Origin: Okamejei kenojei
Taxonomy: Eukaryota
Direction of reading: 5' to 3'
NCBI GenBank assembly: GCA_035221665.1
Contig: CM069151.1
Location: 39,680,001-39,744,000, forward strand
Length of the DNA: 64,000 nt
Shown: in pieces, positions 7,850 to 43,098 of the stretch
Numbering within the stretch: the first letter of the stretch is position 1
Layout: the number at the start of each line of letters is the position of its first letter
Program-made: the position numbers and the translations under genes
Notes under the pieces: generated by a model
What the model was told of the DNA's origin: nothing
Database searches by the model: none
Seen by the model: only the letters and a program-made list of their open reading frames with translations

Positions 7850-10830
7850 AATATGGTGTGCAAATGGGCCCAACCTACCCTTGTCCCAACATGTCCTATC
7901 AAGATTTGTCTAACTTGCTTGCGTTTGTTTGGCCCATATCCCTCTAAACCGGTCCTATCCACATACCAATCTAATTGCTCCTTAAACGTTGCTATAATCC
8001 CTGCCTCTACTATCTCCTCCAGCTGCTTGTTGCTTACACCCAGCACCCTTTGCCTGAAAATGTTATCCCTCAGATTCCTATAAAATCTTTTCCCCTTCAC
8101 CTTAAAACTATGCCCTTTGATTCTCGATTCCCCCACCCTGGGCTAGAAACTCTGTGTGTCCACCTGATGTATTCCTCTCATGATTTTATACACCTCTATC
8201 AGATCACTCCTCATCATCCTGCTCTCCAGGTAATAGAGTCCCAGACTGCGCAATCTTTCCCAACAGCTCAGATTCTCGAGTCCTGGCACCATTCTTGTAA
8301 ATCTTCTCTGCACCCTTTCCAACTAAACATCTTTTCTATGGCATGGTGTCCAGGACTGAATGCAATACTCTAGAAACATAGAAACATAGAAAATAGGTGC
8401 AGGAGGAGGCCATTCGGCCGTTCGAGCCAGTACCGCCATTCATTGTGATCATGGCTGATCGTCCGCTATCAATAACCCTTGCCTGCCTTCTCCCCATATC
8501 CCTTGACTCCACTAGCCCCTAGAGCTCTATCCAACTCTCCCTTAAATCCATCCAGTGATTTGGCTTCCACTGCCCTCTGTGGCAGGGAATTCCATAAATT
8601 CACAACTCTCAGGGTAAAAATCCTGGTCTAAATGAGGTCTCACTGATATCTTATATACAATGGCTTGCAAAAGTTTTCATACCGCTTGAACTTTCCACAT
8701 TTTGTTACGTTACAACCACAAACGTAAATGTATTTTATTGGGATTTTATGTGATAGACCAACACAAAGTGGTGCATAATTGTGAAGTGGAAGGAAAATGA
8801 TACATGGTTTTCAAATTTTTTTACAAATAAAAAACTGAAAAGTGTGGCGTGCAAAAGTATTCAGCCCCCTTTACTCTGATACCCCTAAATAAAATCCAGT
8901 GCAACCAATTGCCTTCAGAAGTCACCTAATTAGTAAATAGAGTCCACTTATGTTTAATCTAATCTCAGTATAAATACAGCTGTTCTGTGACGGCCTCAGA
9001 GGTTTGTCAGAGAACATTAGTGAACAAACAGCATCATGAAGCCCAAGGAACACACCAGACAGGTCAGGGATAAAGTTGTGGAGAAGTTTAAAGCAGAGTT
9101 AGGTTATAAAAAAATATCCCAAGCTTTGAACATCTCACGGAGCATTGTTCAATCCATCATCCGAAAATGGAAAGAGTATGGCACAACTGCAAACCTACCA
9201 AGACATGGACGTCCACCTAAACTGACAGGCCGGGCAAGGAGAGCATTGAAGCAGCCAAGAAGCCCATGGTAACTCTGGAGGAGCTGCAGAGATCCACAGC
9301 TCAGGTGGGAGAATCTGTCCACAGGACAGCTATTAGTCGTACACTCCACAAATCGGACCTTTATGGAAGAGTGGCAAGAAGAAAGCCATTGTTGAAACAA
9401 AGCCATAAGAAGTCCCGTTTGCAGTTTGCCATAAGCCATGTGGTGGAAGGTGCTCTGGTCTGATGAGACCAAAATCGAAGTTTTTGTCCTAAATGCAAAA
9501 CGCTATGTGTGGCGGAAAACTAACTCTGCACATCACCCTGAACACACCATCCCCACTGTGAAACATGGTGGTGGCATCATCATGCTGTGGGGATGCTTTT
9601 CTTCAGCAGGGACAGGGAAGCTGGTCAGAGTCGATGGGAAGATGGATGGAGCCAAATACAGGGCAATCTTGGAAGAAAACCTGTTAGAGTCTGCAAATGA
9701 CTTGAGACTGGGGCGGAGGTTCACCTTCCAGCTGGACAACGACCCTAAACATACAGCCAGAACTACAATGGAATGGTTTAGATCAAGGCATGTCCTTGTG
9801 TTAGAATGGCTCAGTCAAAGTCCAGACCTAAATCCAATTGAGAATCTCTGGCAAGACTGGAAAATTGTTGTTCACAGATGCTCTCCATCCAATCTGACTG
9901 AGCTTGTGCTATTTTGCAAGATAAATGGGCAAAGAAATTCAGTCTCTAGATGTGCACAGCTGGTAGAGACATACCCTGAAAGACTTGCAGCTGTAATTGC
10001 AGCGAAAGGTGGTTCTACAAAGTATTGACTCAGGGGGGCTGAATACTTTTGCACACCACACTTTTCAGTTTTTTATTTGTAATAAAATTTGGAAACCATG
10101 TATCATTTTCCTTCCACTTCACAATTATGCACCACTTTGTGTTGGTCTATCACGTTAAATCCCAATAAAATACATTTACACTTGTGGTTGTAACGTGACA
10201 AAATGTGGAAAAGTTCAAGGGGTATGAAAACTTTTGCAAGCCACTGTAATTGCAATATGACCTCCCAGGTTCTATACTCAATACTCTGACTGATGAAGGC
10301 CAATGTGTCAAAAGCCTTTTTCACTACCTTGACGCCACTTTCAAGGAATTATGTACCTGCACTTATAGGTCCCTCTGCTCTACAACAATTCACAGAGCCT
10401 GACCATTCACCGTGTAGGTCTTACCTATATTAGACTTTCCAAAATGCAACAACTGAAATGTTTCTGTATTAAATTTCATCAACCATTCCTGAGCCCACCA
10501 GGCCAACTGGTCAAGACCCTGCTGCAATTATTGACAACCAGCTTCACTATCTGCAACACCACCCACTTTTGTATCATCTGCAAATTTGTTAATCTTGCCA
10601 TGTACATACTCATGCAAATCATTGAAATAGATACCAAATAGTAATGGGTCCAGCACCGAACCCTGAGGCACACTACTAGTCACAGACCTCCAGTCCAAGA
10701 AGCAGCCTTCCCATCACCCTCTGCTCCTTCCAAGAAGCTAGTTTTCTATCCATTCAACTATCTCTCCTTGGATCCCATGTGATATAACCTTCCAGAACAG
10801 TCTACCATGTGGTATTGACTCATGCAAGTC
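7850..10830 (-). mobile_element. Decayed CR1-type LINE, interrupted by a younger CR1 tail (8371-8620) and the Tc1 element
   Basis: Minus-strand RT remnants (GESRIKGHSFKVKG; KKAFDTLAFISQSIEYR) continue on both sides of the insertions. Confidence 0.75.
8658..10246 (+). mobile_element. Tc1/mariner DNA transposon, Passport-like, full length with frameshifted DD34E transposase (9036-10028)
   Basis: ~210-bp TIRs (CAATGGCTTGCAAAAG... / ...CTTTTGCAAGCCACTG), TA on both sides, motifs GRPPKL, WSDETK, DNDPKH and SPDLNPIENLW; ORF split into three frames. Confidence 0.97.
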
Positions 10831-11139: not shown

Positions 11140-11194
11140 ATGGAGTGTACATTGGAAAAGATGCTGTTGTCATTGCTACTGTTCCCGAGCTTGG
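11140..11194 (+). CDS. Ig-NLR exon 1: signal peptide MECTLEKMLLSLLLFPSL
   Basis: GCAATGG Kozak context, hydrophobic core, phase-1 donor G|GTGAGT. Confidence 0.8.
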
Positions 11195-14100
11195 GTGAGT
11201 GTTCATCTCAATGGGGAGATTGTGTACGTTTCTCATCCACTCGCTGGCTGCTTCTCACAAGTCATGAATCTGATCTTAGAGGCATTACGTTTCCTGTTTT
11301 ATTCATTGCCTAATTTAAGATTGAAGAGTAAACCCTTTGCTCAACAATATAACAAAGATTCTCACACAATTTTTCTTTCATTGCTTATTTGCCGATTGCG
11401 GTGACATTATTCTCCTGCTTTTACCTTAATTTCAATCCTAACATTCCTTTTTTCCCTTCATTTCATTTTGTAACTAAAGTAATATCTTGTAAAGTGTGAT
11501 ATAGCCAGTAGATGTGGAAACATGTCAGTGGATTGGATTTGTGACATGCTGGAAGCTATAGCGTACCACAGCCAGAGAGCAGTGCTGAACTACTATCTAC
11601 CTCGTTGGTGACCTTCAGACTTTCCTTGTTCGGACTTTGCTGGCTTTACCTTGCACTAAACGTTATTCCCTTGTACTGTACTATAATACACTGTAAATAA
11701 ACTGTACATTGTGTGGTTCAATTGTTATCATGTATTGTCTTTCTACTCACTGGATAGCATGCAACAAAAGGTTTTCACTGTACCTCAGTACCCACGCCAA
11801 TAAACTAAACTGAACTGAGTGATATTCGGTTGGAGGTAGATGACTCCAACTTTATCTGCAAGTTATCGCATGCGTTTTCATTTCCTCTATTTTCCCAGTT
11901 GAAGGTTCTTTCTCTCGATCCTATGGGATGTTGCATAGAGACATCTTGCTGCACTCCACTTTCCATGCTTCATCCAACTTCAATCTGAAGAATCTCATCA
12001 TCACATGGCAGCGGACAGACAGTCTCGCCGTGGTTTACAGTTTCTATTCTGGATCAGTCCATCCAGAGCATCACGACACAGCGTTCCTGGGCCGCACTCA
12101 AGTATTTCCTTTGGAATTCTCCAAAGGGAATGCGAGCCTGAAATTGGAAAGAATGTTGTTATCGGATGTGGGAAACTACACTTGCTTTGTAACTGTGGAC
12201 GATGGAATGCCACACATTGAGAACTTGGTGGAACTAAAATTAAATGGTGAGTGCATCGTGTGACAGATTGATCGATGATTTGTTGTGTAAATTTCACAGA
12301 GTTGTAAAGCACAGAAAGGGAATATTTTGGCCATCTCATGCCAATGCCATTCTCTGCCAATCCCATTTGTCTGCATTAGACCAGTATCATTCTCTGTCTT
12401 TCCCATCCAAGTACCTTTCCAAATGTCTTTCAAACATTATAATATTATCACCCTCTACTACCTCCTCCGGAAGCTCATCCCAGATATTATCATCCTGTGT
12501 GAAAACTTTCGCATCAGATCTCTTTTAAAAGTCTCCCCTCTCACCTTGAACTGGTCTTAGTCTCGACCCGCAATCTTATCTGTCCATTCCCCTCCGTGGA
12601 TGTCGAGTTTCTCCAACATTTTGTATTTTGATGCAGATTCCAGCATCAGTCACAACTTGCGTCTCCATTAAACCTGTGCCCTCTAGTTCTGGCACCCTGT
12701 GGAAAAAGATTCTGGCTATATCCCGTTGATATCCTATTTAAACTGGTAGGGGCAAAGTACTCTGTCGTGTGACATTCCAGTGAGTGAAAATCCAGCCTTT
12801 CCAATTTCTCATTATAATTACATTCCACTATTCTGGGCTACATGCTGCTGAATATCTTGTGAATGCTTTTACAATAACACTTCCTGTAACGTGGCAACTA
12901 GAACTGCACTCAGTGTTCCAAATGCAGTGTAAGCAGTGTTTAGTACAGCTCCAACATGATGTTCCAACTCTTGCAGTCATGGCCCTGGCCTATGAAAGCA
13001 AAGGGACCATTCCAATTTATGTTTTGCCTTCTCTGGTGATAGGTTTGGAAGTGCAAGTGAATAAGTGCCACATCTGGGAAGACTGTATCCCTGGACAGTG
13101 GGAAGGGAAGAGATGAAAAGGCAGGTTTTGCAACTTCTGTGGTTGCATGAGAGAGTGTCCCAAGCTTGGGAGCGATTGATCAATACAGAAGACCGGACCA
13201 GGGAAATGCATATAATGTAAAACAGTGCAGCACAGGAGCAGGACATTCGGCCCGTAATGTCCACGCCAAACATGTCAGGTTAAAATAACTGCCCTCTGCC
13301 TGCACTCAGAGTGATTCCTTCAAAATGCTGAAAAGGGAGGAGAGGAAATCAGTCTGAAGAAGGGTCTCGACCCGAAACGTCACCCATTCCTTCTCTCCAG
13401 AGATGCTGCCTGTCCTGCTGAGTTACTCCAGCATTTTGCGTCTATCTTCGATTTAAACCAGCATCTGCAGTTCTTTCCTACGCAGAGGAAAATATATGTT
13501 TGGTGGTCAAGTCTTGTTGGAGCTGTTGGAATTTGCAAAGATGATCCATTGAACGGAGAGGCAACTGGGTAGAAGGACAGATCCAGGGAACTCTGTTGTG
13601 TAGGAAGGAACTGCAGATGCTGGTTTAAACCGAAGATAGACACAAAAAGCTGGAGCAACTCAGTGGGTCAGGCAGCATCTCTGGAGCAAAGGAATAGGTG
13701 ACGTTTCAGATCGAGATCGTTCTCTTCAGCCTGTAATGTCAGTTTGTCGCTCGCCAATCCCCTGAACTGATGATAGAGATCCAGAAGGAGAATGGGAGAG
13801 TCGGATGCTGGAAATTGGAAGCAAAAAGGTAGGTATTTGAGTTGTGCCTGAGTGCAGGAAGCAGCACTGATATAATCGTTGATGTACCAGAAGAACAGTT
13901 GAGGGATGTGCCAGAGTTGCCCCCAAAACAGTGACAGCTCCCTATATCCCACAAAAAGACAGGCATAGCTTAGCCCATGTGAACGCACATAGCAGCACTG
14001 TTGATCTGGGGATTATGGTCATAGTCATTTGTGACAGGTTTGTATCGTGTTAGCACTTGTTGCTTCTAAAAAGTTGTATTCAAAATAGAAGACTTATACT

Positions 14101-17100
14101 TGCAATAAAAGGGTCAATCAGATTTTATCAATCCTGTTCCAAAATGTTAATTATAAAATTAATGACATTATACTAAATCTTGATTTGAAAGCGTGTTTTA
14201 GCTCAATTCTTAATTGAACACTAACCATTTGCTCTTTTGTGCTCTGAACATCGTAGATACATCGGAGAATAATGCATCCGATGGCATCGACCCAGCTTCA
14301 GAAAGGCACAAGCTTGTACTGCTACTTGCAGTGCTGCATGTTTTAACTGCCTGCACAGTTGGAATTGTGTTTTGGAAAATGAAAAACAAGAAGAAACCTG
14401 ATATTGAAGAGAGTGAGTAATATGTTTAAGATTTTGGCCATAATCACACAAACTGAATACCTATTCGAGAATGTGCTCCGAACACTCCAATGGGAAAGGA
14501 TTTCTAGGCACTTTCAGCCACAGTGTATATGACATCCTTTGAGAGGAACATTAACAAATGGTTTATTCTATTTCTTTTTCCAGGTATTCATTTACTGGCA
14601 GAAAATATAAAAGGTAAAGAACCAACCTCCATTGAGATTTTCTTAAGTTATGCTCCAGCATGGAGTAGTTTCCGCCCACAATAGTAGAAGTGGTCTCCTT
14701 GTCCACTACTGGAATCTGCCTTGGAATCAATCTTCAGAAGGGTGTGAAATAATTGTTTTTAGAATGTGGTCGTTGAATGAATAAAAAAATTAAATAATAA
14801 TGAATGTTGAAAGAAAGAACATACAAAATATAAATAAAATCCAGACATGTTTGAGCAAAGTATCTTGACAAGAAATTAATTTTATTCTTTTCAGGAAGCC
14901 CACCCAGTCTCACAACTCATTCAGCAGCTGTTTGACTTTTCAAGCCACATCAGGCTAGAATGGCAGATATCTGAAATTATTGATGCTGATGGATTTTTAC
15001 GGCAGTCCTGTCACTTCCTCATCACCATTACTGAGATTGTTTGAATCTTCAATTCCGCAGCTGCTGTGGTGGGATTTGGGCTGATGTCACTTGATCAATG
15101 GTCCAAGCCTCTAGATGTTAATCACTATGCCAGCATACTCCACTGCTTGCCCTACTCCCTACACAGCCTCATAGTTAACCTTGACACTATTGTAAATGGT
15201 TCGATCAGTGCCCCTTGGCTTGGTGTAATCATACGGTGACCAACCTAGAGTCCCACCAATATGTCCTGAATGGTACCCTAGTGTTGGGTGCAAGGATAGT
15301 TCCTTGTTTCTCACTCCCAAATCATGGATCCATTCTACGATGGAGTTGCATGCTGGAGGCCATAATCTAGCCATTGAGTATTATCTGGCAGGAGGATCGT
15401 CATTCTGCATCATCCCCACACACCCAGGAATCCCAAGTTCACCTTCAAACTGCATCAGATTTTGTTATGTGAAATATTTTCATAATATGGATATTTTGAA
15501 CTATGTAACAAAGTGCCAACCAAAAGCTGGTGTAGATGACGAATGGAAAATCTGCAAGATTTTAATACTTGTGTCAGCAGGGCATAGTGACCAACAATTG
15601 GCAAATGGAATAGTATAGATGGTTACTTGATGATTGACATGGACAAGGTGGGCTGAAGGGGCTGTTTCTGTGCTGCATAACTCTGACAAATTAAACCTGA
15701 AACGATGTGGGAATTCGTAAAGGGGATCAGCAACTTGATGGATATCTGATGCTCACAGTTCTCACATTTTGTTAATCCATGATAATAAAATTCTTACTCG
15801 TTCTGAGAAATGTATCTTTTTCTTCAGATGCCATTCAGAACTATAAAGGGTACATCTTGAAAGATAAAATGCATTTATGTTCATTAACACAACGGCGATT
15901 CGCAAACAATTCGCTTGCCAGAACCATCAATGTTACCAACCCGAAGGAACAAGACCCAGACGGTGATCTTATCAGGAGTGATGACTCAAATATTGCACAA
16001 GAAGTACAAATTTCACAACTGCTGTCTTTGCTTCAGGAAGAAAACTTCTCAAAGCGAGTCCTGCTGGTAGGTGATGCAGGAGTAGGGAAAAGTTGGACTG
16101 TTGTCAGCATGGAACAAGAGTGGGCATCTCAACCAACCCACACCTTGAGGAGCGTCTTGGTTCTCAGATTCCGTGACTTGAATGAGGTTAAAGGAAAGAC
16201 ATCTCTCCGGGATCTGCTCAAGAAGCATTGCACACCTTTGTCATCAGTCCTAACAGAACTCCTCTCGAACCCTCAAGATGTGTTAATCATTTTGGACGGG
16301 CTTGATGAATTCGCCCATCAGTTGCAATGGAATCCATCAGGCTGTGATTTCAACCTGGATAGTGAGGCTGAAGTAGGTGTTCTTGTTTCCAAACTAATAT
16401 CCAAGGACCTCCTTCGAGAAGCCCAGGTGTTGGTTACCTCCCGGTGGAATACCAAGCAGATAGAATTTAACCAGAAGTACTTTGATCGGCTTTTTGTCAT
16501 CTCTGGCTTTACCAATGATCAGTTGAAAAGATATTGTGAGGTGTTTTGTGGAGAGAAGCAAAAGGCGGAAGAAATGTATCAACGCATTACAGAGAATGCG
16601 ACCATCAAATGTCTGGCTTCCAATCCCCTCAACAGCTTCATTCTGTGCAATATTTTGGACAAGTGTACCAGCTCTCAACAAGTGCCTGCAAATGAACCAG
16701 TGACAAATAGCAAAATCTTTACATTGCTGCTGTACAGTCGGTTTAACTGCAGCATGCGTAAAGAAACAGACGCTGAGAATACGAGTGAAGAGGAGAAGGA
16801 ATTGTTTAAAGACACCATCCTGAAACTGGGAGAACTATCCTTCAACTCTCTGCTATCTGGGAAACTTAAGATAGATGTGACTGATCTGAAGACCTATGAC
16901 ATAGACCCAGACAGCCTTTCAAAATATCTCTCAAATCTTGTGCTGGACTGTAAATGCCAAGGAGTCTTTGAGTTCCACCATGCAGTGCTGAAGGAACAAT
17001 TTGCAGCTTTGTATTGTGCTACTTTACTCAAAAATGAAGCTGAAGAGTTGGTCAAGTGTCTGGATCTGTGGTGCTTTGGGAAAAGACCACTAAATCAAAT

Positions 17101-20100
17101 GAGCCAATTTTATTTGCAATCTTTTCAACCTGATCACACGGAGAAACTGTACAATTTTCTGAGGTTTCTCACTGGCTTCTTAACCGCAGGAAGGGATGGC
17201 AAGTTGTGGAACTATACAACTCCTCTCCCCCCTTCTACAGCCAGAGCTCTCACAACATGGTTCAAAAACAGCCTTCAGCAAGACATTAAGAAGGCAGAAT
17301 TGCTGAATTTGATGCATTGTCTCTTTGAACTGAATGATGCCAGTGTAACGGCTGAAGTATCTCCTTGCATCCAACATGTGGATTTTCACAACGTTTCTCT
17401 GAGCCCACTCGATCTGCGTGCTTTGTGCTACTGTCTCAATCGTACCACCGTGGAGGAGATGGATTTGAGGCACTGTAGCATTGGTGATAAAGGAATAAAG
17501 CAGCTCCAAGAAATACTAGTCAAGTGCAGAACTCTTCTGTGAGTAATGACTTTCAAAAGAATATTAAGCCCCAGTTGCACTAATCTACCTTCTTGCATGC
17601 TCAATGTTTGTCGGCATGTTTTATACTTTCTTTTGTCACATTTTATGCCCTGCATGTCCTGATTTATTCTATCCCACCTAATATTTGTGCCTGAAAGTCG
17701 TAATGAAATATATGCATATGGAGATATTACTCTTCAAGACTAAAATGGAAACAATGTGTGCAATCATCTCCCTCACCTACATTGTTCTGTCATAACCCTA
17801 CCCTCCTCCAATGTTGCCGTGTAGAGCCACAGAGCTGTAATGAGTCACAGAGCTGCATTGTAATAACCACAAGGGCAGGGATTTAATTATTTGCATTCAT
17901 TCTAATTGTTGCTCTTATGAATACATTTGCATTGATTAGCAATGTTACAAAATTTTGAGATTTAAAAAATCCAGTCTGCAATTTATCCCATCAGATAAAG
18001 CATTCATATCATCACTTTCATATCTTCAGTATTAAAAAAGTTATGGCCATTTTCATACTCGGAAATTAGCATCTTGTTCCCTATTGTTTTTCTATTGACT
18101 CAACACCAAAGCTGTGATCGAGGACAGTCAAAAGCCCATAACTTTCTTAAAAATTAAGAGAACTGAAACATATCGGCAGGAAAAATACTGCCGGTTCGTA
18201 TGTGGCCTAAATCACCTTTTCGCAACGTAAAATTTGGATTAAGGTAATCCTGAGAAGCACGTTTACATGTAAAATAAACGGCTTACGTTTAGCTGTCCCG
18301 TACGTGAAATCCGTCCTGTTGTCGGCGTTGACGGCATTAGAAGAGGATTTTTATTTTACTCCAGCGCTGAAATTGTCCCGCGGTTTAAAAAAAATAATTC
18401 ACAGAACGGCAGTCGGAACAATTCTTCAGCATTAGCTAGCACCCCGAGAAAATATATCTCGGACAGGCAGGGGAAAATTGCATTTTAACCCCGCCCCCCC
18501 CCCCCCCCCCCCCCCAAAGGCGCCAAAGTCGCGCACACGGCCAGTGGCAGACCGCTGAAGGTAAGTTTTGAAACACACCTACATTGATCTCTATAAAAAG
18601 ACTTGAGGACGGTTTACTTTACCTGCATACACCTGTTGGGGGTTTGATCTTCCTGTAAATCTTGCCCCACCGCATTTACAACACAGCAGTGTCAATGGAC
18701 TGGTATTCATGTATCTAGAGGAACAGCATCTCCTATCTCACCTGGGTGGTCTACAACCTAATGGTATGAACATCGAATTCACGTAACCCCTCTGTCTATT
18801 TGTTGTCTCCTGATACACCTAGGTTGTCTCACATGCCCCTTCTTTTCAAACCTAGCCCCTCTTACTCTCAGTTTCTGTAATCACCCTACCTCATCCCAAA
18901 TGATTCCATCAGTATGATTCCAACACCCACTTGATTTCCCTATTCCCTCCACTGCTCCCCTTTTGCCTGCCATCCCATCCTAATGTGGTTCCACTCACCA
19001 TTATCCTTTCTTATCAGATTCCATAATCTACAGTTCTTTGTACCCATTATCACCTGCCACCTCCTCAGCTTCAGGTTCATCTCAGCACTCCTCATCTGGA
19101 TCCACCTATTACTTAAGGGCACAAAGTGCTGGGGCAACTCAGCGGGTCAGGCAGCATCTCTGGAGAACACGGATCGCTGACGTTTCAGGTCGGGACCCAC
19201 TACAGACTGATCATCAGTTTGAAGAAGAATCCTGACATGAAACATCATCTATGACGTTCTCCAGAGATGCTGCCTGACCTGCTGAGTTACTACAGTGTAC
19301 TATAGTCTTTTGTGTAAATCGGCATCTGCAGTTCCTTGTTTCTACCTATCATTTGCCAGATCCTGCCTCTCGATCTCCCACTCACTTCTGTCCTGGCCAT
19401 ATCCCCTTTATGCTCTCAATTCTCGACCGCAAACATCGATGTCTCTCTGCCTCCACCGATGCTGCTTGACCCGCTGAGTTCTTCCACCACTTTGTTTTTG
19501 CTCCAGATTCCAGCGTTTGCTGTCTCTTGTATATCCAAATATCCAAACATTCATCATTACAAAAAAAGGTTGAATTGATTTTGTGTATTTGAAACTGCTC
19601 AAGCAGAAGCACAGGATCTCAACGATGTAATTATCTGGTCATTTTAAGCCTCATTTGCACTATTGTTCATAAGTCATTGCCCAGACACACGTGTTAGACC
19701 AAGGTTGGGCACTCTGCTCTCCCGGCAGTGCCACAACTGTTTATTTTGCAGCTGCCTTTGCAGGCAGCAGTTTGTGAGGCTTGTGTTCTGTCCCCAGGCA
19801 CTCGGGTCTCTAATTGTTTTCAACATCTTGTGTTTCCAGGGTAAGCTCCAACAAACTGACTGCAAAGTCAGCAAAGAATTTGAGTGCCATCCTTGAAGAC
19901 CCAAAGTGCAGGATTGAGACATTATCGTGAGATTTTTCATCACATAAATACTCTTGTAAAATTCTCCAAGTTTCTATAAAGCTTCTAATCCCTGACATTT
20001 GCCATTTGGTTCCGTTTTCAGGAGTGGTACAAACTCTTTAGGTTCGGCGGGAGCTCAGATTCTTTGGAAAGCTCTGGCAAGAAACAGAAGTCTCAAAATC

Positions 20101-21549
20101 CTTCGCCTGTATGACAATGGGATCACAGGTGAAGGCACAGAGAACATGAATCAGTACCTGACATTCAACAAAACTCTCCAGAAGCTCTAGTAAGTAGCTG
20201 GTAGATGTGAGTGCATAAGCAGTTTATTTGATAAATGCTCACACGGATTGGTTTGTGTGCAATTGTGTTGGCGTTGGTGAGTTTGAGACATGTTATGTAA
20301 ATGTGAAAATGTGGAAACAAGGCATGGCGGATGCTAGTTTACCAGGGAAAGACACAAAAAGCTGGAGTAATGCAGCGGGTCAGGCAGCATTCCTGGAGAA
20401 CATGGATAGGTGACGTTTTGGGACAAGACCCTTTGGTCAGACTGGTTAGTCTGAAGAAGTGTACTGACCTGCAAGTTTGATGAATTTGATTAATCTGATT
20501 GATCAATTCAGACTGATTAAACTGAAGAAGGGTCCCAACTAGTAACGTCATCTATCCATGTTCTCCAGGGATGCTGACTGACCCACTGAGTCAGTCTTTT
20601 TTTTCTTCTTTCCCAGTCTCCATGGGACCTTCTAGCACACAAGGAACACTGCTGTTCCAGATATGTCCATGTGTTTTTGTTTCAATGTGAAGGAGTGGCA
20701 AGAAAGGAACAAGGATTGAGAGTGCATTCTAACTGTGCATTTCAAGACTGTGGCTGAATCACCATTAGCATTGCACTAAGATTAGCTGGCAAAGATTACG
20801 CTTTTCGGAAGGAACCAGGCACATCCTACATTGAGTAATAAAAAAAAGAAACGAGATGTAGGTTTGGAAATATTTTAGATGAGTAAATAGTTTAGAAGGT
20901 CAAAGAAAATTAGGATATAGGGGAACTTTTGTTCAAATTTTCAAATGGGGTAATAATATTTGAAGAAGCATTTGCACGGATACGAGAAAGAGTAGAAGGA
21001 GTGAGCAAGTACAAACCTGCCTAAAGGTCTGCACAGTCATGATGCTGAATGGCCACTTCCTCATTGTAGAAGCTGATGGTTATTAAGTTAACGTGAATGA
21101 GATGGTTGGAATTTAAAATTCTGATTCCTAATTTAAATACGATTGAAGCATTTGCTAATGATCATTGCCTTGTTGCTTTCAGTTTATGTGCAAACAAACT
21201 TGATGACCTTGAACAGAAAAACATTCAAGAAGTCGCAAAGCTGTGTCACGGGCTAAAGGTCATCACTAAAATCCGAGACGATGAAGAGCTCTTACTCCGA
21301 GTTGAAAGTCAGGTTCAAATGCTTCCCTCCCATGAGCAGAGTTACGGCACAAAGTGGCTGCACAAACTATTGAAATCCATTCTGAAAGACCTGGGAGATG
21401 AGAGTACCATACCTGATCTAGACACTCGGGTAAGGATAGGAAAGATAAAAGCAAATATTAACAAATATCTTCAGAAGAACAAAGTGACAATGATTGATGT
21501 TCCAGACAATGAGAATGGGTTCCTTACTCCTGCAAATAACATAATATAA
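11140..21549 (+). CDS. Multi-exon type I membrane IgV-TM-NACHT-LRR protein (~973 aa; 8 coding exons)
   Basis: Exons 11140-11194, 11899-12246, 14257-14412, 14584-14613, 15828-17538, 19840-19926, 20022-20189 and 21183-21549; all introns GT-AG; phases 1,1,1,1,2,2,2 join into one open frame of 2922 nt. Confidence 0.8.
11899..12246 (+). CDS. Ig-NLR exon 2: B7/butyrophilin-family IgV domain
   Basis: Acceptor TTTCCCAG; IITWQR (C-strand Trp), GRTQVF, GNASLKL and DVGNYTCFV motifs; 348 nt, phase 1-1; donor G|GTGAGT. Confidence 0.93.
13350..13730. repeat. Inverted pair of Penelope-derived short terminal repeats (family recurs many times across the window)
   Basis: CTGAAGAAGGGTCTCGACCCGAAACGTCACC...GATGCTGCC...GAGTTACTCCAGCA in opposite orientations; similar pairs at ~19120-19340, 36440-36650 and 53990-54190. 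Confidence 0.75.
14257..14412 (+). CDS. Ig-NLR exon 3: stalk, transmembrane helix and basic stop-transfer sequence
   Basis: DTSENNASDGIDPASERHK-LVLLLAVLHVLTACTVGIVFW-KMKNKKK; 156 nt, phase 1-1; donor A|GTGAGT. Confidence 0.88.
14584..14613 (+). CDS. Ig-NLR exon 4: 30-nt juxtamembrane micro-exon (SIHLLAENIK)
   Basis: Strong acceptor TTTCTTTTTCCAG, donor AAG|GTAAAG, phase 1-1, open frame. Confidence 0.72.
14895..14935 (+). CDS. Candidate alternative terminal exon (GSPPSLTTHSAAV*) giving a short IgV-TM isoform
   Basis: Strong acceptor TTTTATTCTTTTCAG; read in phase 1 it stops after 13 codons. Confidence 0.35.
15828..17538 (+). CDS. Ig-NLR exon 5: NACHT NTPase, HD1, winged helix, HD2 and first LRRs
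   Basis: Walker A GDAGVGKS, Walker B VLIILDGLDEF, sensor-1 VLVTSR, SNPL, winged-helix FEFHHAVLKEQFAALY, LLNLMHCLFEL, LSPLDLRAL; acceptor TTTTTCTTCAG in phase 1; donor CT|GTGAGT. Confidence 0.95.
17938..18581. mobile_element. Probable non-autonomous DNA transposon in the NLR intron
   Basis: Imperfect terminal inverted match AGCAATGTTACAAAA / TTTTGAAACACACCT and a CpG-rich interior unlike the flanking intron; family not assigned. Confidence 0.4.
19840..19926 (+). CDS. Ig-NLR exon 6: LRR (VSSNKLTAKSAKNLSAILEDPKCRIETL)
   Basis: 87-nt phase 2-2 exon typical of RI-like NLR LRRs; acceptor TTTCCAG, donor TC|GTGAGA. Confidence 0.88.
20022..20189 (+). CDS. Ig-NLR exon 7: two LRRs (NSLGSAGAQILWKALARNRSLKILRLYDNGITGEG...)
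   Basis: 168 nt (2 x 84), phase 2-2; donor TA|GTAAGT. Confidence 0.92.
21183..21549 (+). CDS. Ig-NLR exon 8: last LRR, NLRX1-like C-terminal helical bundle and stop
   Basis: Acceptor TTGCTTTCAG in phase 2; YLCANKL LRR followed by KWLHKLLKSILKDLGD...IGKIKANINKYL; TAA at 21547-21549. Confidence 0.85.
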
Positions 21550-24500
21550 GATATAGGGTTGTTAGCACGCAATATTCAACATATTTTTATATTTCCTTAC
21601 GGTGATTGTATTTTATCAATGCGTCTTTTCTTCATTTCCCAACTAATTGGGAGCTAATTATGCAGGGTCGAGCACATCAGTGTCCAGTGACAGTAATTCC
21701 ATGTAATGTTGCCTTTTCTCAGAGAGTCTTTGCAGTGGCTACACTGACCATCAGTGTGGCCTTCAGCACTTCTTCCAGTAGAAACAAGTTGCCAAACATG
21801 TCTTCACATTCACTCAGTCTACCTTGGAGCACTTCCCAGATGAGAAAGTGTCCATTTCAACCAGGAGGTAAATGTTGCCAGTCTACAAATAATATGTGGC
21901 AGCATTTTGTTTGCAGTTTTAGAGAACAAGACTTAAGTGCAAATATGCTTTAAGTGTAGTGGAGCAGCTGATGCCACAGATGGTGCTGTCAAACACCTGT
22001 TTGGGGAAAAACATGTGCAAAAAAGTTGAAGTTAAAGTCAACATGTGTTCCCAGGTAGACTGTGAACGTGAAGAATGTTTCTCTGTCCAATATGTGTGAC
22101 ATTTCATAAAGCGAACCACTGTAAATAATGATTGAGTTCAATCTATCATTGTAATCAAATTGACAAGATATGACTGCACTATATGAAGGCATATTATTAT
22201 GGCTGTAGATGGAGGCAAACTAACAAGACACAGTGTTGATAGACACAAAATGCTGGAGTAACTCAGTGGGTCAGACAGCATCTCTGGAGTAGGTGACATT
22301 TTGGGTGGAGACCCTTTTTCAGACTGAGAGTCAGGAAAAGGAAACGAGGGATATAAATGGTGATGTATATGCATATCTTTCATTCATTTATTCTATATCT
22401 CACTACATCACAGTCTATATCACTCATTTCCCTTTCCCCTGATAGTCATGCACTGGTGAAGGACTGGTTGGTCATTGCACTTTGTTTGCTATGACTAGTA
22501 GTGATTGAGAAACAACACCTTGAGTAGAAAAGCAGCAAAAGTTAACGTGTAAGATTTTAGCTCAGCAAGTGTGAAAGGTATTGAGAACAGGAATTGTCAG
22601 GACAAGTTGTCATTTGAAGTTCAAAGCTGGTAGCTGGACCTGTTGTATTAAATGTGTTTACCTTCTGACAAACCTAAACGTCAATATTAACCAAGACTTC
22701 ATTTCCAAGCTGCTCCACAGACTTAAACTGATTGTATATAGATCCACAAATGACAACAGTAACGCAGATCATAATAGAAATGTAATGGCGTTTGGATAAT
22801 AAAATCATCATGTATTTTAATCTAAATCTAAATCACATTGGTAGTAGTAGGAGGGAGGATCAATTCATGGGGTGCATATGAGATGGTTTCTGAATCATTT
22901 TGTGGAGAAAGCAACAATGAACAGGCTATTTTAGATATGGGATACTGCAATGAGAAAGGGTTAAATTATCTAAGTGACCATTAGGGAAGAGAGATCATAA
23001 TAAGATAAAATTTTGTTCAAAGTTTAGTTCAATCTGAAGATAGTACCCAAACAGGGATAATATAAAAATCACGAGCATTAGGGATGAGGTGGCCTGGTAG
23101 GTTGGGAAACACCATTGATAATTATAACAATAAACAAGCAATAAAATAAACAATAAAAAATTACCACATAGTTTACTTGTGATATTTATATCTTTCTTTG
23201 TGGAATAAAATGTATCCAATTATAACCGTGAGAAAGATAACAATATGTCAAAGGAAAGTGTTTATGTTATTCAATAAAGCTGTAAGCTTGAGGTTTGGGA
23301 ACGTCATTAGGCACATGGACATGTAGGGAATGGAGGGATATGGATCACATACAATCAGAGGAGAATAGTTTAATTTGGAATCGTAATCATGATCATGAAC
23401 AAAGGGCCTGTTCCTGTGTTTTACTGTTCCACGTTCTAAAACCGCTAGTCATGAAATAAATGCTTTATGTACTTCAAAGGTAAGACCAAGGTATTGGCAA
23501 TGAAAAGGTGGGGAGACTGTAAGAATAGCTGAGAGATAAATATCCTGTAAGAGTTTCTAAAGGTACATAAAGAGGAAAATATTAGTGGAAATTAAGGTGA
23601 AAACACTTTGCAGGCGTTAAAGAAAACTTTAAAACACACCACCAAGATCAGGCAAGGCAATCAAGACTTTATTAAGAGCATCAAATACAGTGATCAGTGG
23701 GAGGAGTTTCTCCCTGAACAAAGATTCATCTACTTCTTATATACTGAATTTTGATTTGTTATGTTGTTTACTGTAGCAGGCACTTATGCACTTTTCCTTC
23801 TGCTGAATGATCTTATAACAATTTTACTTCGGAGTCACGTGAGTGACTACGTGAAGAAGCCCCGCCTGGCGCATGATCGGCATTACGTCGACGCTGACGG
23901 CAGAGCAAGAGCTGCAGAGGCAGCTCCTCTACAGCGGTAAGTACAGGCCCACAGGTAAGTGCAGTTGAAATACTTACAGGGCATATCCAAACTCCGTGGC
24001 TGGTGTATAGAGCCACCAGGTGTTAAAAAGAAATGGAATTTAAAAGCAAAAAATAAAATAAAAGTTAAAATGAAAAGAAAATACAGATATACGGTGGAAA
24101 AAACGGAGTTTAAAAAGCGTCCCAGGGGAAAACTCAGCGATCGGGATGGCAGATTAAGTGATGAGCCGGTTCCGATACCGGTGGCCGTTAAAATTACCGT
24201 TAGGGAGACTTTAGTTGCTCCACAAACTTTTGGCTATAAGGAAAAACGGAGTTTAAAAGTTAAAAAGAAAAGAAAATACTCCGGGGGAAAAAATGGAGTA
24301 TAAAAGTTAAAAAGGAAAATAAATACTCCGGGTGAAAAAAAAGGAGTTTAAAAGTTAAAATGAAAAGAAAAAACTCCAGTGGGAAGGAAAAAATTTAAAA
24401 AAGTCAGAGAGGCCATGTTTTAAAAAGTTCTAATAAAAAGGCCTCCAGACAAAAAAGCTTTATGGCTTAAAATTAATGGAGAAAGACTCCAAAAATAAAA

Positions 24501-25140: not shown

Positions 25141-28100
25141 AACATAGAAACATAGAAACATAGAAATTAGGTGCAGGAGTAGGCCATTCAGCCCTTCGAG
25201 CCTGCACCGCCATTCAATATGATCATGGCTGATCATCCAACTCAGTATCCCGTACCTGCCTTCTCTCCATACCCTCTGATCCCCTTAGCCACAAGGGCCA
25301 CATCCAACTCACTCTTAAATATAGCCAATGAACTGGCCTCAACTACCCTCTGTGGCAGAGAGTTCCAGAGACTCACCACTCTCTGTGTGAAAAAAGTCTT
25401 TCTCATCTCGGTCTTAAAGGATTTCCCCCTTATCCTTAAGCTGTGACCCCTTGTCCTGGACTTCCCCAACATCGGGAACAATCTTCCTGCATCTAGCCTG
25501 TCCAACCCCTTAAGAATTTTGTAAGTTTCTATAAGATCCCCTCTCAATCTCCTAAATTCCAGAGAGTATAAACCGAGTCTATCCAGTCTTTCTTCATAAG
25601 ACAGTCCTGACATCCCAGGAATCAGTCTGGTGAACCTTCTCTGCACTCCCTCTATGGCAATAATGTCCTTTCTCAGATTTGGAGACCAAAACTGTACGCA
25701 ATACTCCAGGTGTGGTCTCACCAAGACCCTGTACAACTGAAGTAGAACCTCCCTGCTCCTGTACTCAAATCCTTTTGCTATGAAAGCTAACATACCATTC
25801 GCTTTTTTCACTGCCTGCTGCACCTGCATGCCTACTTTCAATGACTGGTGTACCATGACACCCAGGTCTCGCTGCATCTCCCCTTTTCCTAATCGGCCAC
25901 CATTTAAATAATAGTCTGCTTTCCTGTTTTTGCCACCAAAGTGGATAACCTCACATTTATCCACATTATACTGCATCTGCCAAACATTTGCCCACTCAAC
26001 CAGCCTATCCAAGTCATCTTGCAGTCTCCTAGCATCCTCCTCACAGCGAACACTGCCCCCCAGCTTAGTGTAATCCGCAAACTTGGAGATATTGCCTTCA
26101 ATTCCCTCATCCAGATCATTAATATATATTGTAAATAGCTGGGGTCCCAGCACTGAGCCCTGCGGTACCCCACTAGTTACTGCCTGCCATTGTGAAAAGG
26201 ACCCGTTTACTCCTACTCTTTGCTTCCTGTTTGCCAGCCAGTTCTCTATCCACATCAATACTGAACCCCTAGTACCGTATGCTTTAAGTTTGTATACTAA
26301 TCTCTTATGTGGGACCTTGTCGAAAGCCTTCTGGAAGTCCAGATATACCACATCCACTGGTTCTCCCTTATCCACGCTACTAGTTACATCCTCGAAAAAT
26401 TCCACAAGATTCGTCAGACATGATTTACCTTTTGTAAATCCATGCTGACTTTGTCCAATGATTTCACCACTTTCCAAATGTGCTGCTATCCCATCTTTAA
26501 TAACTGACTCTAGCAGTTTCCCCACTACCGATGTTAGACTAACTGGTCTGTAATTCCCCGTTTTCTCTCTCCCTCCCTTCTTAAAAAGAGGGGTTACATT
26601 TGCTACCCGCCAATCCTCAGGAACTACTCCAGAATCTAAAGAGTTTTGAAAGATTATCACTAATGCATCCACTATTTCCTGAGCTACTTCCTTAAGTACT
26701 CTGGGATGCAGCCTATCTGGCCCTGGGGATTTATCGGCCTTTAATCTATTCAATTTACCCAACACCACTTCCCGACTGACCTGGATTTCACTCAATTCCT
26801 CCTTTGACCCACAGTCCCCTGCTATTTCAGGCAGATTATTTATGTCTTCCTTAGTGAAGACGGAACCAAAGTAGTTATTCAATTGGTCCGCCATATCCTT
26901 GTTCCCCATGATCAACTCACCTGTTTCTGACTGCAAGGGACCTACATTTGTTTTAACTAACCTCTTTCCCTTCACATATCTATAAAAACTTTGTTCCCTG
27001 CCAGTTTTCTTTCATAATCTATTTTTCCTTTCCTAATTAAGCCCTTTGTCCTCCTCTGCTGGTCTCTGAATTTCTCCCAGTCCTCTGGTATGCTGCTTTT
27101 TCTGGCTACTTTGTACGCATCATCCTTTGCTTTGATACTATCCCTGATTTCCCTTGTTATCCACGGATGCACTACCTTCCCCGATTTATTCTTTTGCCAA
27201 ACTGGGATGAACAATTTTTGTAGTTCATCCATGCAGTCTTTAAATGTCTTCCATTGTATATCCACCGTCAACCCTTTTAGAATTAATTGCCAGTCAATCT
27301 TGGCCAATTCACGTCTCATACCCTCAAAGTTACCTTTCTTTAAGTTCAGAACCATTGTTTCTGAATTAACAATGTCACTCTCCATCCTAATGAAGAACTC
27401 AACCATATTATGGTCACTCTTGCCCAAGGGGGCACGTACAACAAGACAGCTAATTACCCCTTCCTCATTACTCAAAACCCAGTCTAAAATAGCCTGCTCT
27501 CTCGTTGGTTCCTCTACATGTTGATTTAGATAACTATCCCGCATACATTCCAAAAAATCCTCTTCCTCATCACCCCTGCCAATTTGATTAACCCAATCTA
27601 TATGTAGATTGAAGTCACCCATTATAACTGTTTTGCCTTTGTCGCACGCATTTCTAATTTCCTGTTTGATACCATCCCCAACTTCTCTGCTACTGTTAGG
27701 TGGCCTGTACACAACACCCACAAGCGTTTTCTGCCCCTTAGTGTTTTGTAGCTCTACCCATACCGATTCCACATCCTCCAAGCTAATGTCCTTCCTTTCC
27801 ATTGCGTTAATCTCCTCTCTAACCAGCAACGCTACCCCACCTCCTTTTCCTTTCTCTCTATCCCTCCTGAATATTGAATATCCCTGGATGTTCAGCTCCC
27901 AGCCTACGTCACCCTGGAGCCATGTCTCCGTGATCCCAACTATATCATAATCATTAATATCTATCTGCACGTTCAACTCGTCCACCTTATTACGAATACT
28001 CCTTGCATTGAGACACAAAGCCTTCAGGCTTGTCTTTACAACGCACTTACCCCTTATACAATTTTGCTGAAAAGTGGCCCTTTTTGATTTTTGCCCTGGT

Positions 28101-42427: not shown

Positions 42428-43098
42428 CCTAGTTCTATCCTACACAATAGGGACAATTTACAGAAGCCAATTAACCAACAAACCTGCATGTCCTTGGAAT
42501 GTCGAAGGAAACTGGAGCACCCAGAGAAAACCCACACGGTCACAGGGAGAACATACAAGCTCTATACAGACAGCGCCCATAGTCAGGATCTTGACGCTGT
42601 AAGACAGTGTGCAGTGTGGGATTGACGATCGGAATTGGATGGGTGGGTCAAAGGACCTTTTCTGTGCTATACAACCCTAATAGTCTGAAATGTTGCACAA
42701 AGCATAGGGTTTTGGCCCTAGAGAAGAGTAGGTGCCTGGGTGTTGCTTCGTGTTGTTCCAGTGCCCATTCTCAGCATGGAGAACATAAGAAAGTGGTTGA
42801 GGTGAGGGGTAGGAGGTATAGTGAGAGATGTTTTGACTCAAAGCTGAGAATTTTGGAGTATCTCATGGTTGTGAATGGTGTGGAAAAGAGGAATCCCTCT
42901 GCACCAGTCTGGGCACTGTAAATAATTGTTCTGATGTATATTGTTACAGTATGTTACATAATGAAAGTGTGGGAAAGTGAGTTGTGAGGATGACAAAAGG
43001 GCGACACAAAGAGGCAAAAAAAAAGGGTGCGCATGGCCAAAGATTGTGTTAATGTGAGAAAATGTGGGATCGTCCAATTTTGTGCTTTGTTGTTACAG

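What the first reader, a model, noticed from the sequence alone, without database searches (positions are those of the whole stretch)
17440..21549. LRR region and C-terminal helical bundle resemble NLRX1
Seen: the LRRs end in LQKLYLCANKLDDLEQKNIQEV..GLKVITKIRDD..SYGTKWLHKLLKSILKDLGD..RIGKIKANINKYL. From memory, human NLRX1 ends [66 protein letters not shown], and the earlier repeats also align (ILEDPKCRIETL versus LLLHDQCQITTL), with about one LRR fewer here. Established: NLRX1 lacks a death-fold domain, has an N-terminal mitochondrial targeting sequence, and its C-terminal fragment oligomerises with the help of a terminal helical bundle. Inference: this may be an NLRX1-related paralogue whose targeting module was swapped for SP-IgV-TM, relocating it to the plasma or endosomal membrane.
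Basis: partly seen in the sequence, partly recalled or inferred. Interest (0 to 1): 0.75.

Follow-up and report, generated by a model that had tools for sequence, protein, structure and literature searches.

The report
NLRX1-like tail on a membrane NLR
The end of this cartilaginous-fish immune-receptor gene is predicted to fold most like the end of human NLRX1, among solved structures, but I found no sequence evidence that the two are close relatives.

Summary
Window 17440-21549 encodes the C-terminal part of a + strand gene: the end of the NACHT exon (to 17538), then exons 19840-19926, 20022-20189 and 21183-21549. Spliced contigs in 4 of 4 public runs show two of the three junctions as GT..AG joints; the third follows from contig positions.

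It forms six ribonuclease-inhibitor-type leucine-rich repeats (LRRs), a seventh strand, and a conserved three-helix bundle (AlphaFold2 pLDDT 86).

The tail alone lands on NLRX1's bundle, residues 906-970 (rmsd 2.2 Å), but at Z 8.4 it ties with generic bundles.

Of 15 hits among 1.84 billion representatives, 13 are this family (cartilaginous fish, coelacanth, lungfish, amphibians, turtle) and 2 are repeat-protein noise. The LRR unit pattern and the quoted motif type recur in ray "NLRP3-like" NLRs that lack a tail. The NACHT forms its own deep clade.

I could not obtain an NLRX1 sequence, so paralogy is untested. The scan noted this gene before, on this same window only (s1-880312).

The parts
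11140..11196 (+). First coding exon: start codon and signal-peptide-like hydrophobic stretch (MECTLEKMLLSLLLFPSLG). The end coordinate is approximate.
   Evidence: Frame translation. It matches the N-termini of the orthologues. Not studied further here.
11889..12245 (+). IgV (V-set) exon. Borders are those of the tblastn match.
   Evidence: Pfam V-set E 9e-5. tblastn of P0001 residues 21-141.
14244..14411 (+). Stalk, transmembrane helix (LVLLLAVLHVLTACTVGIVFW) and basic stop-transfer stretch (KMKNKKK).
   Evidence: Translation. tblastn of P0001 residues 138-191.
15827..17538 (+). Large exon holding NACHT, winged helix, HD2 and LRR1-2. The start is approximate; the donor is ct|gtgagt after 17538.
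   Evidence: Pfam NACHT 3.4e-25, NLRC4_HD2 1.8e-16, NOD2_WH 1.1e-4. Donor site read. Contig pieces end at 17538 in 4 of 4 runs.
19840..19926 (+). 87-nt exon for LRR3, the 29-residue unit (VSSNKLTAKSAKNLSAILEDPKCRIETL).
   Evidence: Splice sites read. The joint 19926>20022 occurs in 4 of 4 runs, and 87 record letters separate the flanking pieces in contigs of X1, X2 and X4.
20022..20189 (+). 168-nt exon for LRR4 and LRR5 (two 28-residue units).
   Evidence: Splice sites read. Joints 19926>20022 and 20189>21183 are GT..AG in 4 of 4 runs.
21183..21261 (+). Start of the last exon: LRR6 (LCANKLDDLEQKNIQEVAKLCHGLKV).
   Evidence: Acceptor site read. Alignment A4. Strands E141-143 and E168-170 in the model.
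21262..21483 (+). Terminal strand (ITKI) and a conserved three-helix bundle of 74 residues. Near-invariant positions fall in the DDEELLLRVE, Y..EWL and ILKDLGDE stretches.
   Evidence: Alignments A3 and A4. Helices 177-193, 199-213 and 222-247 in the model, and 34-54, 56-70 and 79-104 in the model. The tail model aligns to 3UN9 residues 906-970.
21484..21549 (+). Poorly conserved, low-confidence C-terminal extension and the stop codon (21547-21549).
   Evidence: pLDDT below 50 for model residues 247-270. Variable columns in A4. A 6-nt insertion after 21520 appears in contigs of 3 of 4 runs.

Best explanation
What it is. The stretch encodes the cytoplasmic C-terminal module of a type-I membrane NLR with the layout signal peptide, IgV, TM helix, NACHT, LRR, tail. 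The gene belongs to an unnamed family that predates the split of cartilaginous and bony vertebrates.

Structure. The module has six ribonuclease-inhibitor-type LRRs of about 27, 25, 29, 28, 28 and 28 residues, then a seventh beta-strand, capped by a conserved three-helix bundle. Among solved structures this architecture is seen in the NLRX1 C-terminal fragment, so the two look alike. The evidence favours a family of its own. The likeness of its cap to the NLRX1 bundle is one of fold class and position, and shared descent is not shown.

Likely working (inferred, not shown). As in other NLRs, the LRR arc probably folds back on the NACHT and holds it inactive, or binds a partner. The helical cap probably seals the hydrophobic end of the short solenoid. 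Its conserved acidic and hydrophobic face probably serves as a docking or self-association surface, as has been proposed for the NLRX1 bundle.
For: Gene model and expression:
- Splice sites and spliced contigs in 4 of 4 runs.

Family:
- 16 cartilaginous-fish orthologues at 47-93% identity among the 26 hits.
- The tail profile finds 15 proteins at E<=0.001 among 1,835,955,588. One is the family's own representative and 12 are family members or fragments from coelacanth, lungfish, salamanders, frogs and a turtle. Two are repeat-protein noise.
- 6 of the 10 scanned carry V-set + NACHT + HD2.
- The NACHT tree gives the family 100/100 support, with a cartilaginous-fish (100/99) versus lobe-finned (100/98) split as in the species tree. 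It lies outside the group of NOD1/2, ray NLRP3-like and teleost NLR-C (95/93, 38 rows).

Fold:
- pLDDT 86, pTM 0.81.
- 3UN9 is top by Foldseek and VIA.
- The tail maps to 3UN9 906-970 at 2.2 Å.

Why it is not shown to be NLRX1 kin:
- Searches give no 3UN9 hit at E<=10; one search gives none named NLRX1.
- Structure-based identity to 3UN9 is 20-21%, against 26-28% to the NLRP1 LRR.
- Ray NLRP3-like proteins match profile positions 2-169 in one near-gapless stretch (82 and 71 bits) and end there.

Published background: NLRX1 has unit lengths 29, 25, 29, 28, 28, 28, 28, 28 plus a helical LRRCT (PMC4598782, passages).
Against: - No NLRX1, NLRC3, NLRC5 or CIITA sequence is in my tree. A sister relation to NLRX1 is therefore not excluded, and the family's isolated position would fit it.
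- 3UN9 is the single best structural match, and no other listed chain has a helical cap that aligns.
- The run of 25- then 29- then 28-residue units matches the published NLRX1 pattern. The profile matched 129 positions to 129 residues of the NLRX1 chain, which fits an in-register alignment.
- A paralogue split at the base of jawed vertebrates could be too old for a 74-position profile to detect.
- The proposed functions are inferred from analogy only.
Confidence: 0.55

Rival explanations
1. True NLRX1 paralogue. The LRR plus three-helix-bundle module, and perhaps the NACHT, descend from the same ancestor as NLRX1, for instance through the early vertebrate genome duplications. The N-terminal localisation module differs: a mitochondrial presequence in NLRX1, and SP-IgV-TM here.
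For: - 3UN9 is the top structural match by three routes.
- The tail alone superposes on NLRX1 906-970 at 2.2 Å.
- The LRR unit pattern x-25-29-28-28-28 matches the published 29-25-29-28-28-28-28-28 (PMC4598782, passages; my count).
- The profile matches the NLRX1 LRRs at 72 bits in one stretch of equal length on both sides.
- Neither protein has a death-fold domain.
- Both lineages date to early jawed vertebrates (Howe et al. 2016, PMC4852459, passage, for NLRX1; for this family).
- The family's NACHT nests in no other sampled clade.
Against: - No sequence or profile signal for the tail.
- The tail-only structural score ties with generic bundles, at 9% identity, and Foldseek finds nothing for the tail alone.
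- The whole-module and tail-only alignments disagree by about one repeat, and the whole-module rmsd is 8.4 Å.
- The same LRR pattern occurs in tail-less ray NLRP3-like NLRs, so it may be ancestral.
- Word-limited searches and the language-model atlas never brought up an NLRX1-named protein. That is weak evidence.
Confidence: 0.25
2. The family is an offshoot of the NLRP / fish NLR-C / shark 'NLRP3-like' group. It gained the IgV-TM head and the helical tail as its own additions, and the NLRX1 likeness is convergent.
For: - The best non-family sequence matches are teleost FISNA-NACHT NLR-C proteins (1e-31 to 1e-16; down to 2e-94 with the profile) and ray NLRP3-like proteins (1e-27).
- PDB best hit is NLRP3 at 1.4e-17, against NOD2 at 8.5e-15.
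- Atlas nearest clusters are FISNA-NACHT.
- Ray NLRP3-like proteins share the six-LRR layout almost without gaps.
- The whale shark paper reports a novel shark NLR family near the NLRPs (PMC8455134, passages). I did not check whether that is this family.
Against: - The careful tree puts NOD1/2 together with NLR-C and ray NLRP3-like, to the exclusion of this family (95/93). That reading depends on one long amphioxus branch for the root.
- Pfam FISNA does not hit the NACHT exon at E<=1.
- NLRP3 and NOD2 E-values differ by less than three orders of magnitude.
Confidence: 0.15
3. The three-helix cap is a prediction artefact. In this reading the tail is really a coiled coil, an extended helix or disordered, and the 3UN9 match reflects only LRRs followed by any helices.
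For: - The alignments are shallow (14 and 23 rows).
- The isolated tail model has pTM 0.62 and no Foldseek match at E<=0.001.
- Axonemal LRR proteins (DRC5) also gave long Foldseek alignments of 236-258 columns.
Against: - Tail pLDDT is 86-91 in most blocks, dipping to 71 for residues 191-200.
- Two independent predictions place the three helices at the same residues.
- Hydrophobic positions are conserved from chimaera to frogs.
- The VIA alignment at 2.2 Å to a real three-helix bundle covers all three helices.
Confidence: 0.05

Closest known systems
Human NLRX1 C-terminal fragment (PDB 3UN9; residues 629-975)
   Same: - Both have short ribonuclease-inhibitor-type LRRs followed by a C-terminal three-helix bundle.
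- It is the best structural match of the whole module.
- The tail maps onto residues 906-970.
- The run of unit lengths 25-29-28-28-28 is similar (PMC4598782, passages).
- Neither protein has a death-fold domain.
   Different: - There are six LRRs plus a strand here, against eight (or seven) in NLRX1.
- Structure-based identity is 20-21% overall and 9% in the bundle.
- Profiles detect no similarity in the tail.
- The N-terminus here is SP-IgV-TM, not a mitochondrial targeting sequence.
- The relationship of the NACHT domains is untested.
Ray/shark 'NLRP3-like' NLRs (P0017, P0020 and relatives; database names only)
   Same: They have the same six LRRs with the same unit lengths, aligned in one near-gapless stretch of 82 and 71 bits. 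They also carry the same type of '...P.C.I..L' motif. They come from the same animal group.
   Different: They end 2 residues after the last LRR strand and have no helical tail. Pfam finds no V-set domain in them. NACHT identity is only 23-25%, and they form a separate clade.
Teleost NLR-C (FISNA-NACHT, often with B30.2)
   Same: They are the best-scoring non-family sequence matches over NACHT-HD2 and the nearest clusters in the atlas.
   Different: They have FISNA, many more LRRs with 4-residue insertions relative to this family, and often B30.2. They have no IgV-TM and no helical tail.
NOD1 / NOD2
   Same: They share the NACHT-WH-HD2-LRR core. The NOD2 LRRs superpose at 1.9 Å over 162-170 residues.
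   Different: They have CARD heads. Sequence matches are weak (1e-6 to 1e-4). There are indels in LRR1-2. They have no helical cap, and they form a separate clade.
Ribonuclease inhibitor and axonemal LRR proteins (LRRC34, DRC5)
   Same: They belong to the same LRR class and give the best profile scores in PDB (2e-33 to 2e-28). The LRR arc superposes at about 2.0 Å.
   Different: They have no NACHT, and no three-helix cap aligned in the VIA runs (model range ends near residue 172). Their higher profile scores partly sum several repeated stretches.

Membership tests
NLRX1 (orthologue or close paralogue) | N-terminal mitochondrial targeting sequence and no other N-terminal effector domain | tested here: not met
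   The N-terminus is a signal-peptide-like stretch, a V-set Ig domain and a TM helix. The NLRX1 targeting sequence is taken from PMC6797603 (passage).
NLRX1 (orthologue or close paralogue) | NACHT groups with NLRX1 in a phylogeny of vertebrate NLRs | not testable with these tools
   No NLRX1 sequence came back from three word-indexed searches. Three candidates checked against PDB were not NLRX1. The tree without NLRX1 shows a separate deep clade.
NLRX1 (orthologue or close paralogue) | C-terminal three-helix bundle (LRRCT) directly after RI-type LRRs | tested here: met
   Predicted helices at 177-193, 199-213 and 222-247 follow the last strand. 3UN9 is the top match. The tail aligns to 906-970 at rmsd 2.2 Å. 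This rests on prediction, not on a solved structure.
NLRX1 (orthologue or close paralogue) | Detectable sequence or profile similarity of the tail to the NLRX1 bundle | tested here: not met
   There is no 3UN9 hit at E<=10 with the single exon, the 15-row profile or the 23-row profile. No NLRX1-named protein is among the 15 hits in 1.84 billion representatives.
NLRX1 (orthologue or close paralogue) | Eight (or seven) LRRs | tested here: inconclusive
   There are six LRRs plus a terminal strand here. The order of unit lengths matches the first six published NLRX1 units except the first (PMC4598782, passages). The same pattern occurs in ray NLRP3-like NLRs.
NLR (NACHT-LRR STAND ATPases of animals) | NACHT with Walker A (GDAGVGKS) and Walker B (ILDGLDE), winged helix, HD2, and C-terminal LRRs | tested here: met
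   Pfam NACHT 3.4e-25, HD2 1.8e-16, NOD2_WH 1.1e-4 (below its cut-off). The Walker residues are invariant across the family; the names 'Walker A/B' for these stretches are my own labelling. NLRP3 and NOD2 hits in PDB.
NLRP / NLR-C (FISNA-type) | FISNA extension before the NACHT; PYD, or a B30.2 tail | tested here: not met
   No Pfam FISNA, PYD or SPRY hit at E<=1 on the exons. The alignment to NLRP3 does start about 40 residues before the Walker A, so a remnant is not excluded.
Unnamed IgV-TM-NLR family (database proteins P0001-P0016, P0027, P0104-P0127) | V-set + TM + NACHT-HD2 + six LRRs + conserved 74-residue tail | tested here: met
   The window exons align to P0001 at 66-93% identity, exon by exon. 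The architecture is conserved in 14 aligned orthologues and in 6 of 10 lobe-finned or amphibian proteins scanned.

The most novel reading that the evidence does not exclude
This family and NLRX1 may be sister paralogues born at the base of jawed vertebrates. Both would have kept one sensor and assembly module, short RI-type LRRs closed by a three-helix bundle, while their N-terminal address labels diverged. NLRX1 goes to mitochondria by a presequence. This family goes to the plasma or endosomal membrane by a signal peptide, an extracellular IgV and a TM helix. The same cytoplasmic module would then work from two different membranes. The membrane-anchored version was later lost, or not detected here, in teleosts, birds and mammals.
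Probability: 0.25. Interest if true: 0.8.

Novelty: new variant of a known kind. Interest (0 to 1): 0.55.

Why it matters
Reviews still call the NLRX1 three-helix bundle uncharacterised (PMC6797603, passage), and in my structure searches no other listed chain had a comparable cap. Here a second, independent and strongly conserved NLR family carries a cap in the same position and of the same fold class. This suggests that 'LRR plus helical cap' is a recurring, and possibly ancestral, way to finish an NLR sensor. The two families can be compared to learn what the cap does.

The host protein is itself unusual: a vertebrate NLR anchored in a membrane with an extracellular IgV. I found no paper on it. 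Searches turned up no paper on such a protein among the rows listed, going by titles and abstract starts; I read passages only of PMC8455134 and PMC4852459. Supplements, which could list it, were closed.

If the paralogy with NLRX1 were shown, it would date both the module and the change of address label to early jawed vertebrates.

Tried and rejected
**Fetching an NLRX1 sequence.**
- Three word-indexed searches returned no protein named NLRX1: the NACHT exon, P0002 residues 200-760 and the 16-row family profile.
- Three unnamed candidates of suitable length (P0101, P0085, P0201) were checked against PDB sequences and are not NLRX1.
- The scan's own notes hold no other NLRX1 or NACHT note for this genome.
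- So I could not run the NACHT tree with NLRX1, a profile-profile comparison of the tails, or the check for a separate NLRX1 gene in this genome. For the last point I have only the literature: an NLRX1 orthologue in whale shark (PMC8455134, passage) and an origin of NLRX1 at the base of jawed vertebrates (PMC4852459, passage).

**Searches that gave little.**
- Pfam on the tail gave nothing at E<=1.
- The atlas gave only generic ribonuclease-inhibitor LRR clusters for the LRR-tail part and FISNA-NACHT or NLRC3 clusters for the NACHT part.
- I first read the PDB ranking (3UN9 at rank 23) as evidence against NLRX1. I withdrew that reading: proteins with many LRRs sum several stretches, while the NLRX1 score is one stretch of 72 bits.
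- The window holds no gene useful for synteny. Most other long ORFs are retroelement or transposase remnants, judged by eye.
- The original NLRX1 structure paper (PMC3368889) is not held. [quoted passage not shown]

The exons were searched one by one, and full-length database orthologues stood in for the spliced product.

**Rows dropped.**
- A1 left out P0009 and P0012, which are shorter isoforms.
- The tree had 46 rows.
- The trees had 38 rows. Dropped were three long-branch 'ena' rows (P0085, P0100, P0101), two goby CARD-NACHT rows (P0091, P0092), P0018, P0028 and the long-branch P0110.

Full report
**1. What is there**

The window carries a multi-exon gene on the + strand. A large open exon (about 15827-17538) holds NACHT (Pfam 3.4e-25), a winged helix and HD2 (1.8e-16). 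Upstream lie a V-set Ig exon (Pfam 9e-5) and an exon with a hydrophobic helix followed by KMKNKKK.

By the splice sites it continues through exons 19840-19926 (87 nt), 20022-20189 (168 nt) and 21183-21549, which ends in the stop codon. One of them, LQKLYLCANKLDD..., spans a junction.

They were searched one at a time, and full-length database orthologues stood in for the spliced product.

**2. The model is transcribed and spliced as read**

Contigs of four public runs were laid on 17300-21650.
- The joints 19926>20022 and 20189>21183, both GT..AG, occur in 4 of 4 runs.
- In three runs (X1, X2, X4) a single contig of 3015-4055 letters lies on 17300-17538, 20022-20189 and 21183-21650. Exactly 87 record letters separate the first two pieces, which equals exon 19840-19926. 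In X19 the pieces are on two contigs.
- The 17538>19840 joint itself was not among the rows printed.
- The runs are only guessed to be RNA. Intron-less contigs with canonical junctions are, however, what transcripts give.
- Three runs carry a 6-nt insertion after 21520, in the unconserved end.

**3. The family**

The NACHT exon finds 26 proteins at E<=1e-10 among 8000 scored candidates. Sixteen are orthologues at 47-93% identity from skates, rays, sawfish, sharks and a chimaera. All but two shorter isoforms (810 and 855 aa) are 934-1024 aa, and 14 of the 16 have V-set on record with NACHT and HD2. The other ten are only 23-30% identical. Fourteen of the orthologues align end to end, and their sequence runs straight through the window's exon junctions. 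By identity, the window's organism is a cartilaginous fish closest to skates.

**4. Fold of the C-terminal module**

The C-terminal 270 residues of the skate orthologue P0002 were folded with 13 other orthologues as the alignment. The model has pLDDT 86.0 and pTM 0.81. It shows seven short strands alternating with helices, then helices at 177-193, 199-213 and 222-247, and then a disordered end.

By the LxxLxLxxN/C pattern I count units of 27, 25, 29, 28, 28 and 28 residues plus a last strand. This is my own count on the sequence.

**5.

- Foldseek against the PDB puts the NLRX1 C-terminal fragment first: 3un9_A, E 1.3e-14, TM 0.64/0.59, 266 columns, 20% identity. The next entry scores 1.9e-9.
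- VIA-align gives 3un9_A Z 24.4 (212 residues aligned, rmsd 8.4 Å, model 1-250 on chain 697-948), against Z 21.8 and below for chains that cover only the LRR arc (model 1 to about 172, rmsd about 2.0 Å). This holds in the second look at 988 chains and in the independent run over 48,161 representatives, where it ranks first.
- The window's last exon was folded with 22 relatives (pLDDT 80.6, pTM 0.62). That model aligns to 3UN9 residues 906-970, the terminal bundle, with 64 residues at 2.2 Å. It ranks 4 of 48,161.
- Published passages say NLRX1 has eight RI-type LRRs of 29, 25, 29, 28, 28, 28, 28 and 28 residues and a helical bundle after them (PMC4598782), or seven LRRs and an 'uncharacterized three-helix bundle' (PMC6797603). 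The run 25-29-28-28-28 is the same as here.
- The profile of the module matched 129 positions to 129 residues of the NLRX1 chain in a single stretch of 72 bits.

**6. Evidence against a specific link**

(a) The tail has no sequence link to NLRX1.
- The single exon, a 15-row tail profile (38 weak hits, the best being EF-Tu at 0.076) and a 23-row profile spanning sharks to frogs (14 weak hits) give no 3UN9 hit at E<=10.
- The 15-row profile, read against 1,835,955,588 representatives, gives 15 proteins at E<=0.001. One is the family's own representative. Twelve are family members or fragments from coelacanth, lungfish, salamanders, frogs and a turtle; ten of these were looked up by name and the others judged from their sequences. 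Two are repeat proteins. None is NLRX1.

(b) The tail-only structural score is not discriminating. Z 8.4 at 9% identity ties with norovirus NS3, a plant NLR, designed bundles, spectrin, GAT and BAG domains. The tool itself warns that Z below about 13 is common for helical bundles. Foldseek finds nothing at E<=0.001 for the tail model, and 3UN9 is not among the rows listed.

(c) The whole-module and tail-only alignments place the tail about one repeat apart on NLRX1. This explains the 8.4 Å rmsd. The two proteins share a layout, not a rigid shape.

(d) The LRR likeness is shared with other NLRs.
- Ray 'NLRP3-like' NLRs match profile positions 2-169 in one stretch with a single one-residue insertion (82.0 and 71.1 bits), and they end two residues later, with no tail.
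- NOD2 (57.7 bits) and NOD1 (47.8 bits) need indels in the first repeats.
- Structure-based identity is higher to the NLRP1 LRR (26-28%) than to NLRX1 (20-21%).

**7. The NACHT**

- Against PDB sequences the best hits are NLRP3 (1.4e-17), NLRP6 and NOD2 (8.5e-15). No full-length NLRX1 appears among the hits.
- Outside the family, the best database matches are teleost FISNA-NACHT NLR-C proteins (1e-31 to 1e-16). NOD1 and NOD2 reach only 1e-6 to 1e-4 (92 hits among 8000 candidates). With the family profile there are 106 hits, again none named NLRX1. These searches depend on shared words, so a blank proves little.
- A careful tree of NACHT-HD2 (38 rows, 491 columns) gives the family 100/100 support. 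It splits into cartilaginous fishes (100/99) and lobe-finned fishes plus amphibians (100/98), as expected for one gene inherited from the common ancestor. NOD1/2, ray NLRP3-like and teleost NLR-C group together to its exclusion (95/93). In the quick tree of 46 rows the same fork was unresolved.
- The root rests on one long amphioxus branch. NLRX1, NLRC3, NLRC5 and CIITA are absent because I could not fetch them.
Support for NLRX1 kinship is not obtained either.

**8. Range of the family**

Pfam finds V-set, NACHT and HD2 in 6 of 10 lobe-finned or amphibian proteins scanned: Pleurodeles, Discoglossus, Pelodytes, Ranitomeya, Protopterus and Pelobates. The other four are fragments, an isoform without the Ig part, or a coelacanth model that joins the 3' half of one copy to the IgV-TM of the next.

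No teleost, bird or mammal protein was among the tail hits. This is absence at that sensitivity only.

Published passages say NLRX1 itself exists in whale shark (PMC8455134) and arose at the base of jawed vertebrates (PMC4852459). If so, this family is not the shark NLRX1 orthologue. I could not check whether this genome has its own NLRX1.

**9. Reading**

The stretch encodes the sensor end of a membrane-anchored NLR: six short LRRs closed by a conserved three-helix cap. The architectural likeness to NLRX1 is real, and NLRX1 is the best match among solved structures.

Whether the cap is inherited from a common ancestor with NLRX1 or arose separately is open. I put it at about 0.25 for sister paralogy, and 0.55 for a lineage of its own whose cap resembles NLRX1's only in fold class.

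The proposed role of the cap is inference by analogy. It would seal the end of the solenoid and offer a conserved docking or self-association face (DDEELLLRVE, Y..EWL, ILKDLGDE).

**10. Novelty**

The proteins are in public databases under automatic names (NLRC3-like, NLRP1 homolog and others). My three literature searches turned up no paper on an IgV-TM-NLR or on its tail among the rows listed, going by titles and abstract starts. I read passages only of PMC8455134 and PMC4852459. Supplements were closed and could list such genes.

The scan noted the same gene on this same window (s1-880312).

Noticed in passing
window 14412-15826: About 10 residues present in the closest orthologue (P0001 192-201, between the TM exon and the NACHT exon) were not found by tblastn, so a micro-exon is missing from my model. 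A candidate reading PLLESALE lies near 14703-14726, but its splice sites are unclear. Another note of the scan proposes an alternative terminal exon at 14895-14935, which I did not test.
   Followed up: partly
proteins P0112 versus P0125 (Lissotriton) and P0114 (Chrysemys): One predicted newt isoform lacks exactly the 56-residue LRR4-5 unit, as if the 168-nt exon were skipped in frame. The 284-residue turtle protein has HD2 and LRR1-2, then goes straight to LRR6 and the tail, with no Ig or NACHT part. It could be a remnant or a partial gene model.
   Followed up: no
protein P0105 (Latimeria): This gene model joins HD2-LRR-tail of one copy to the IgV and TM of a following copy. That suggests tandem copies of the family in coelacanth.
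   Followed up: no
proteins P0017, P0020 and relatives (rays): 'NLRP3-like' NLRs of rays share the six-LRR layout of this family, including the 25- and 29-residue units, but end right after the last strand. They may be the novel shark NLR family that the whale shark paper mentions. I did not check this.
   Followed up: partly
window 17884-18175, 19052-19343, 20220-20657: The introns of the LRR region hold high-copy repeats. Summed contig depth there reaches thousands to hundreds of thousands, against 10-120 on the exons, with many joints between the repeat copies.
   Followed up: no
window 21520: Contigs of three runs carry a 6-nt in-frame insertion here, in the unconserved C-terminal end, plus seven single-letter differences in the last exon. 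The fourth run matches the window exactly. These are probably alleles or a close relative.
   Followed up: no
window 25242-29016 (-), 39929-42558 (-), 49467-50662 (-), 55980-59635 (+), 9438-10028 (+): These are long ORFs that look like reverse transcriptase and endonuclease (LINE-like) and a Tc1-like transposase remnant. I judged this by eye from the translations and ran no family search on them.
   Followed up: no
window 52471-52794: A run of 324 N flanked by CA/GT and GA/CT-type simple repeats.
   Followed up: no
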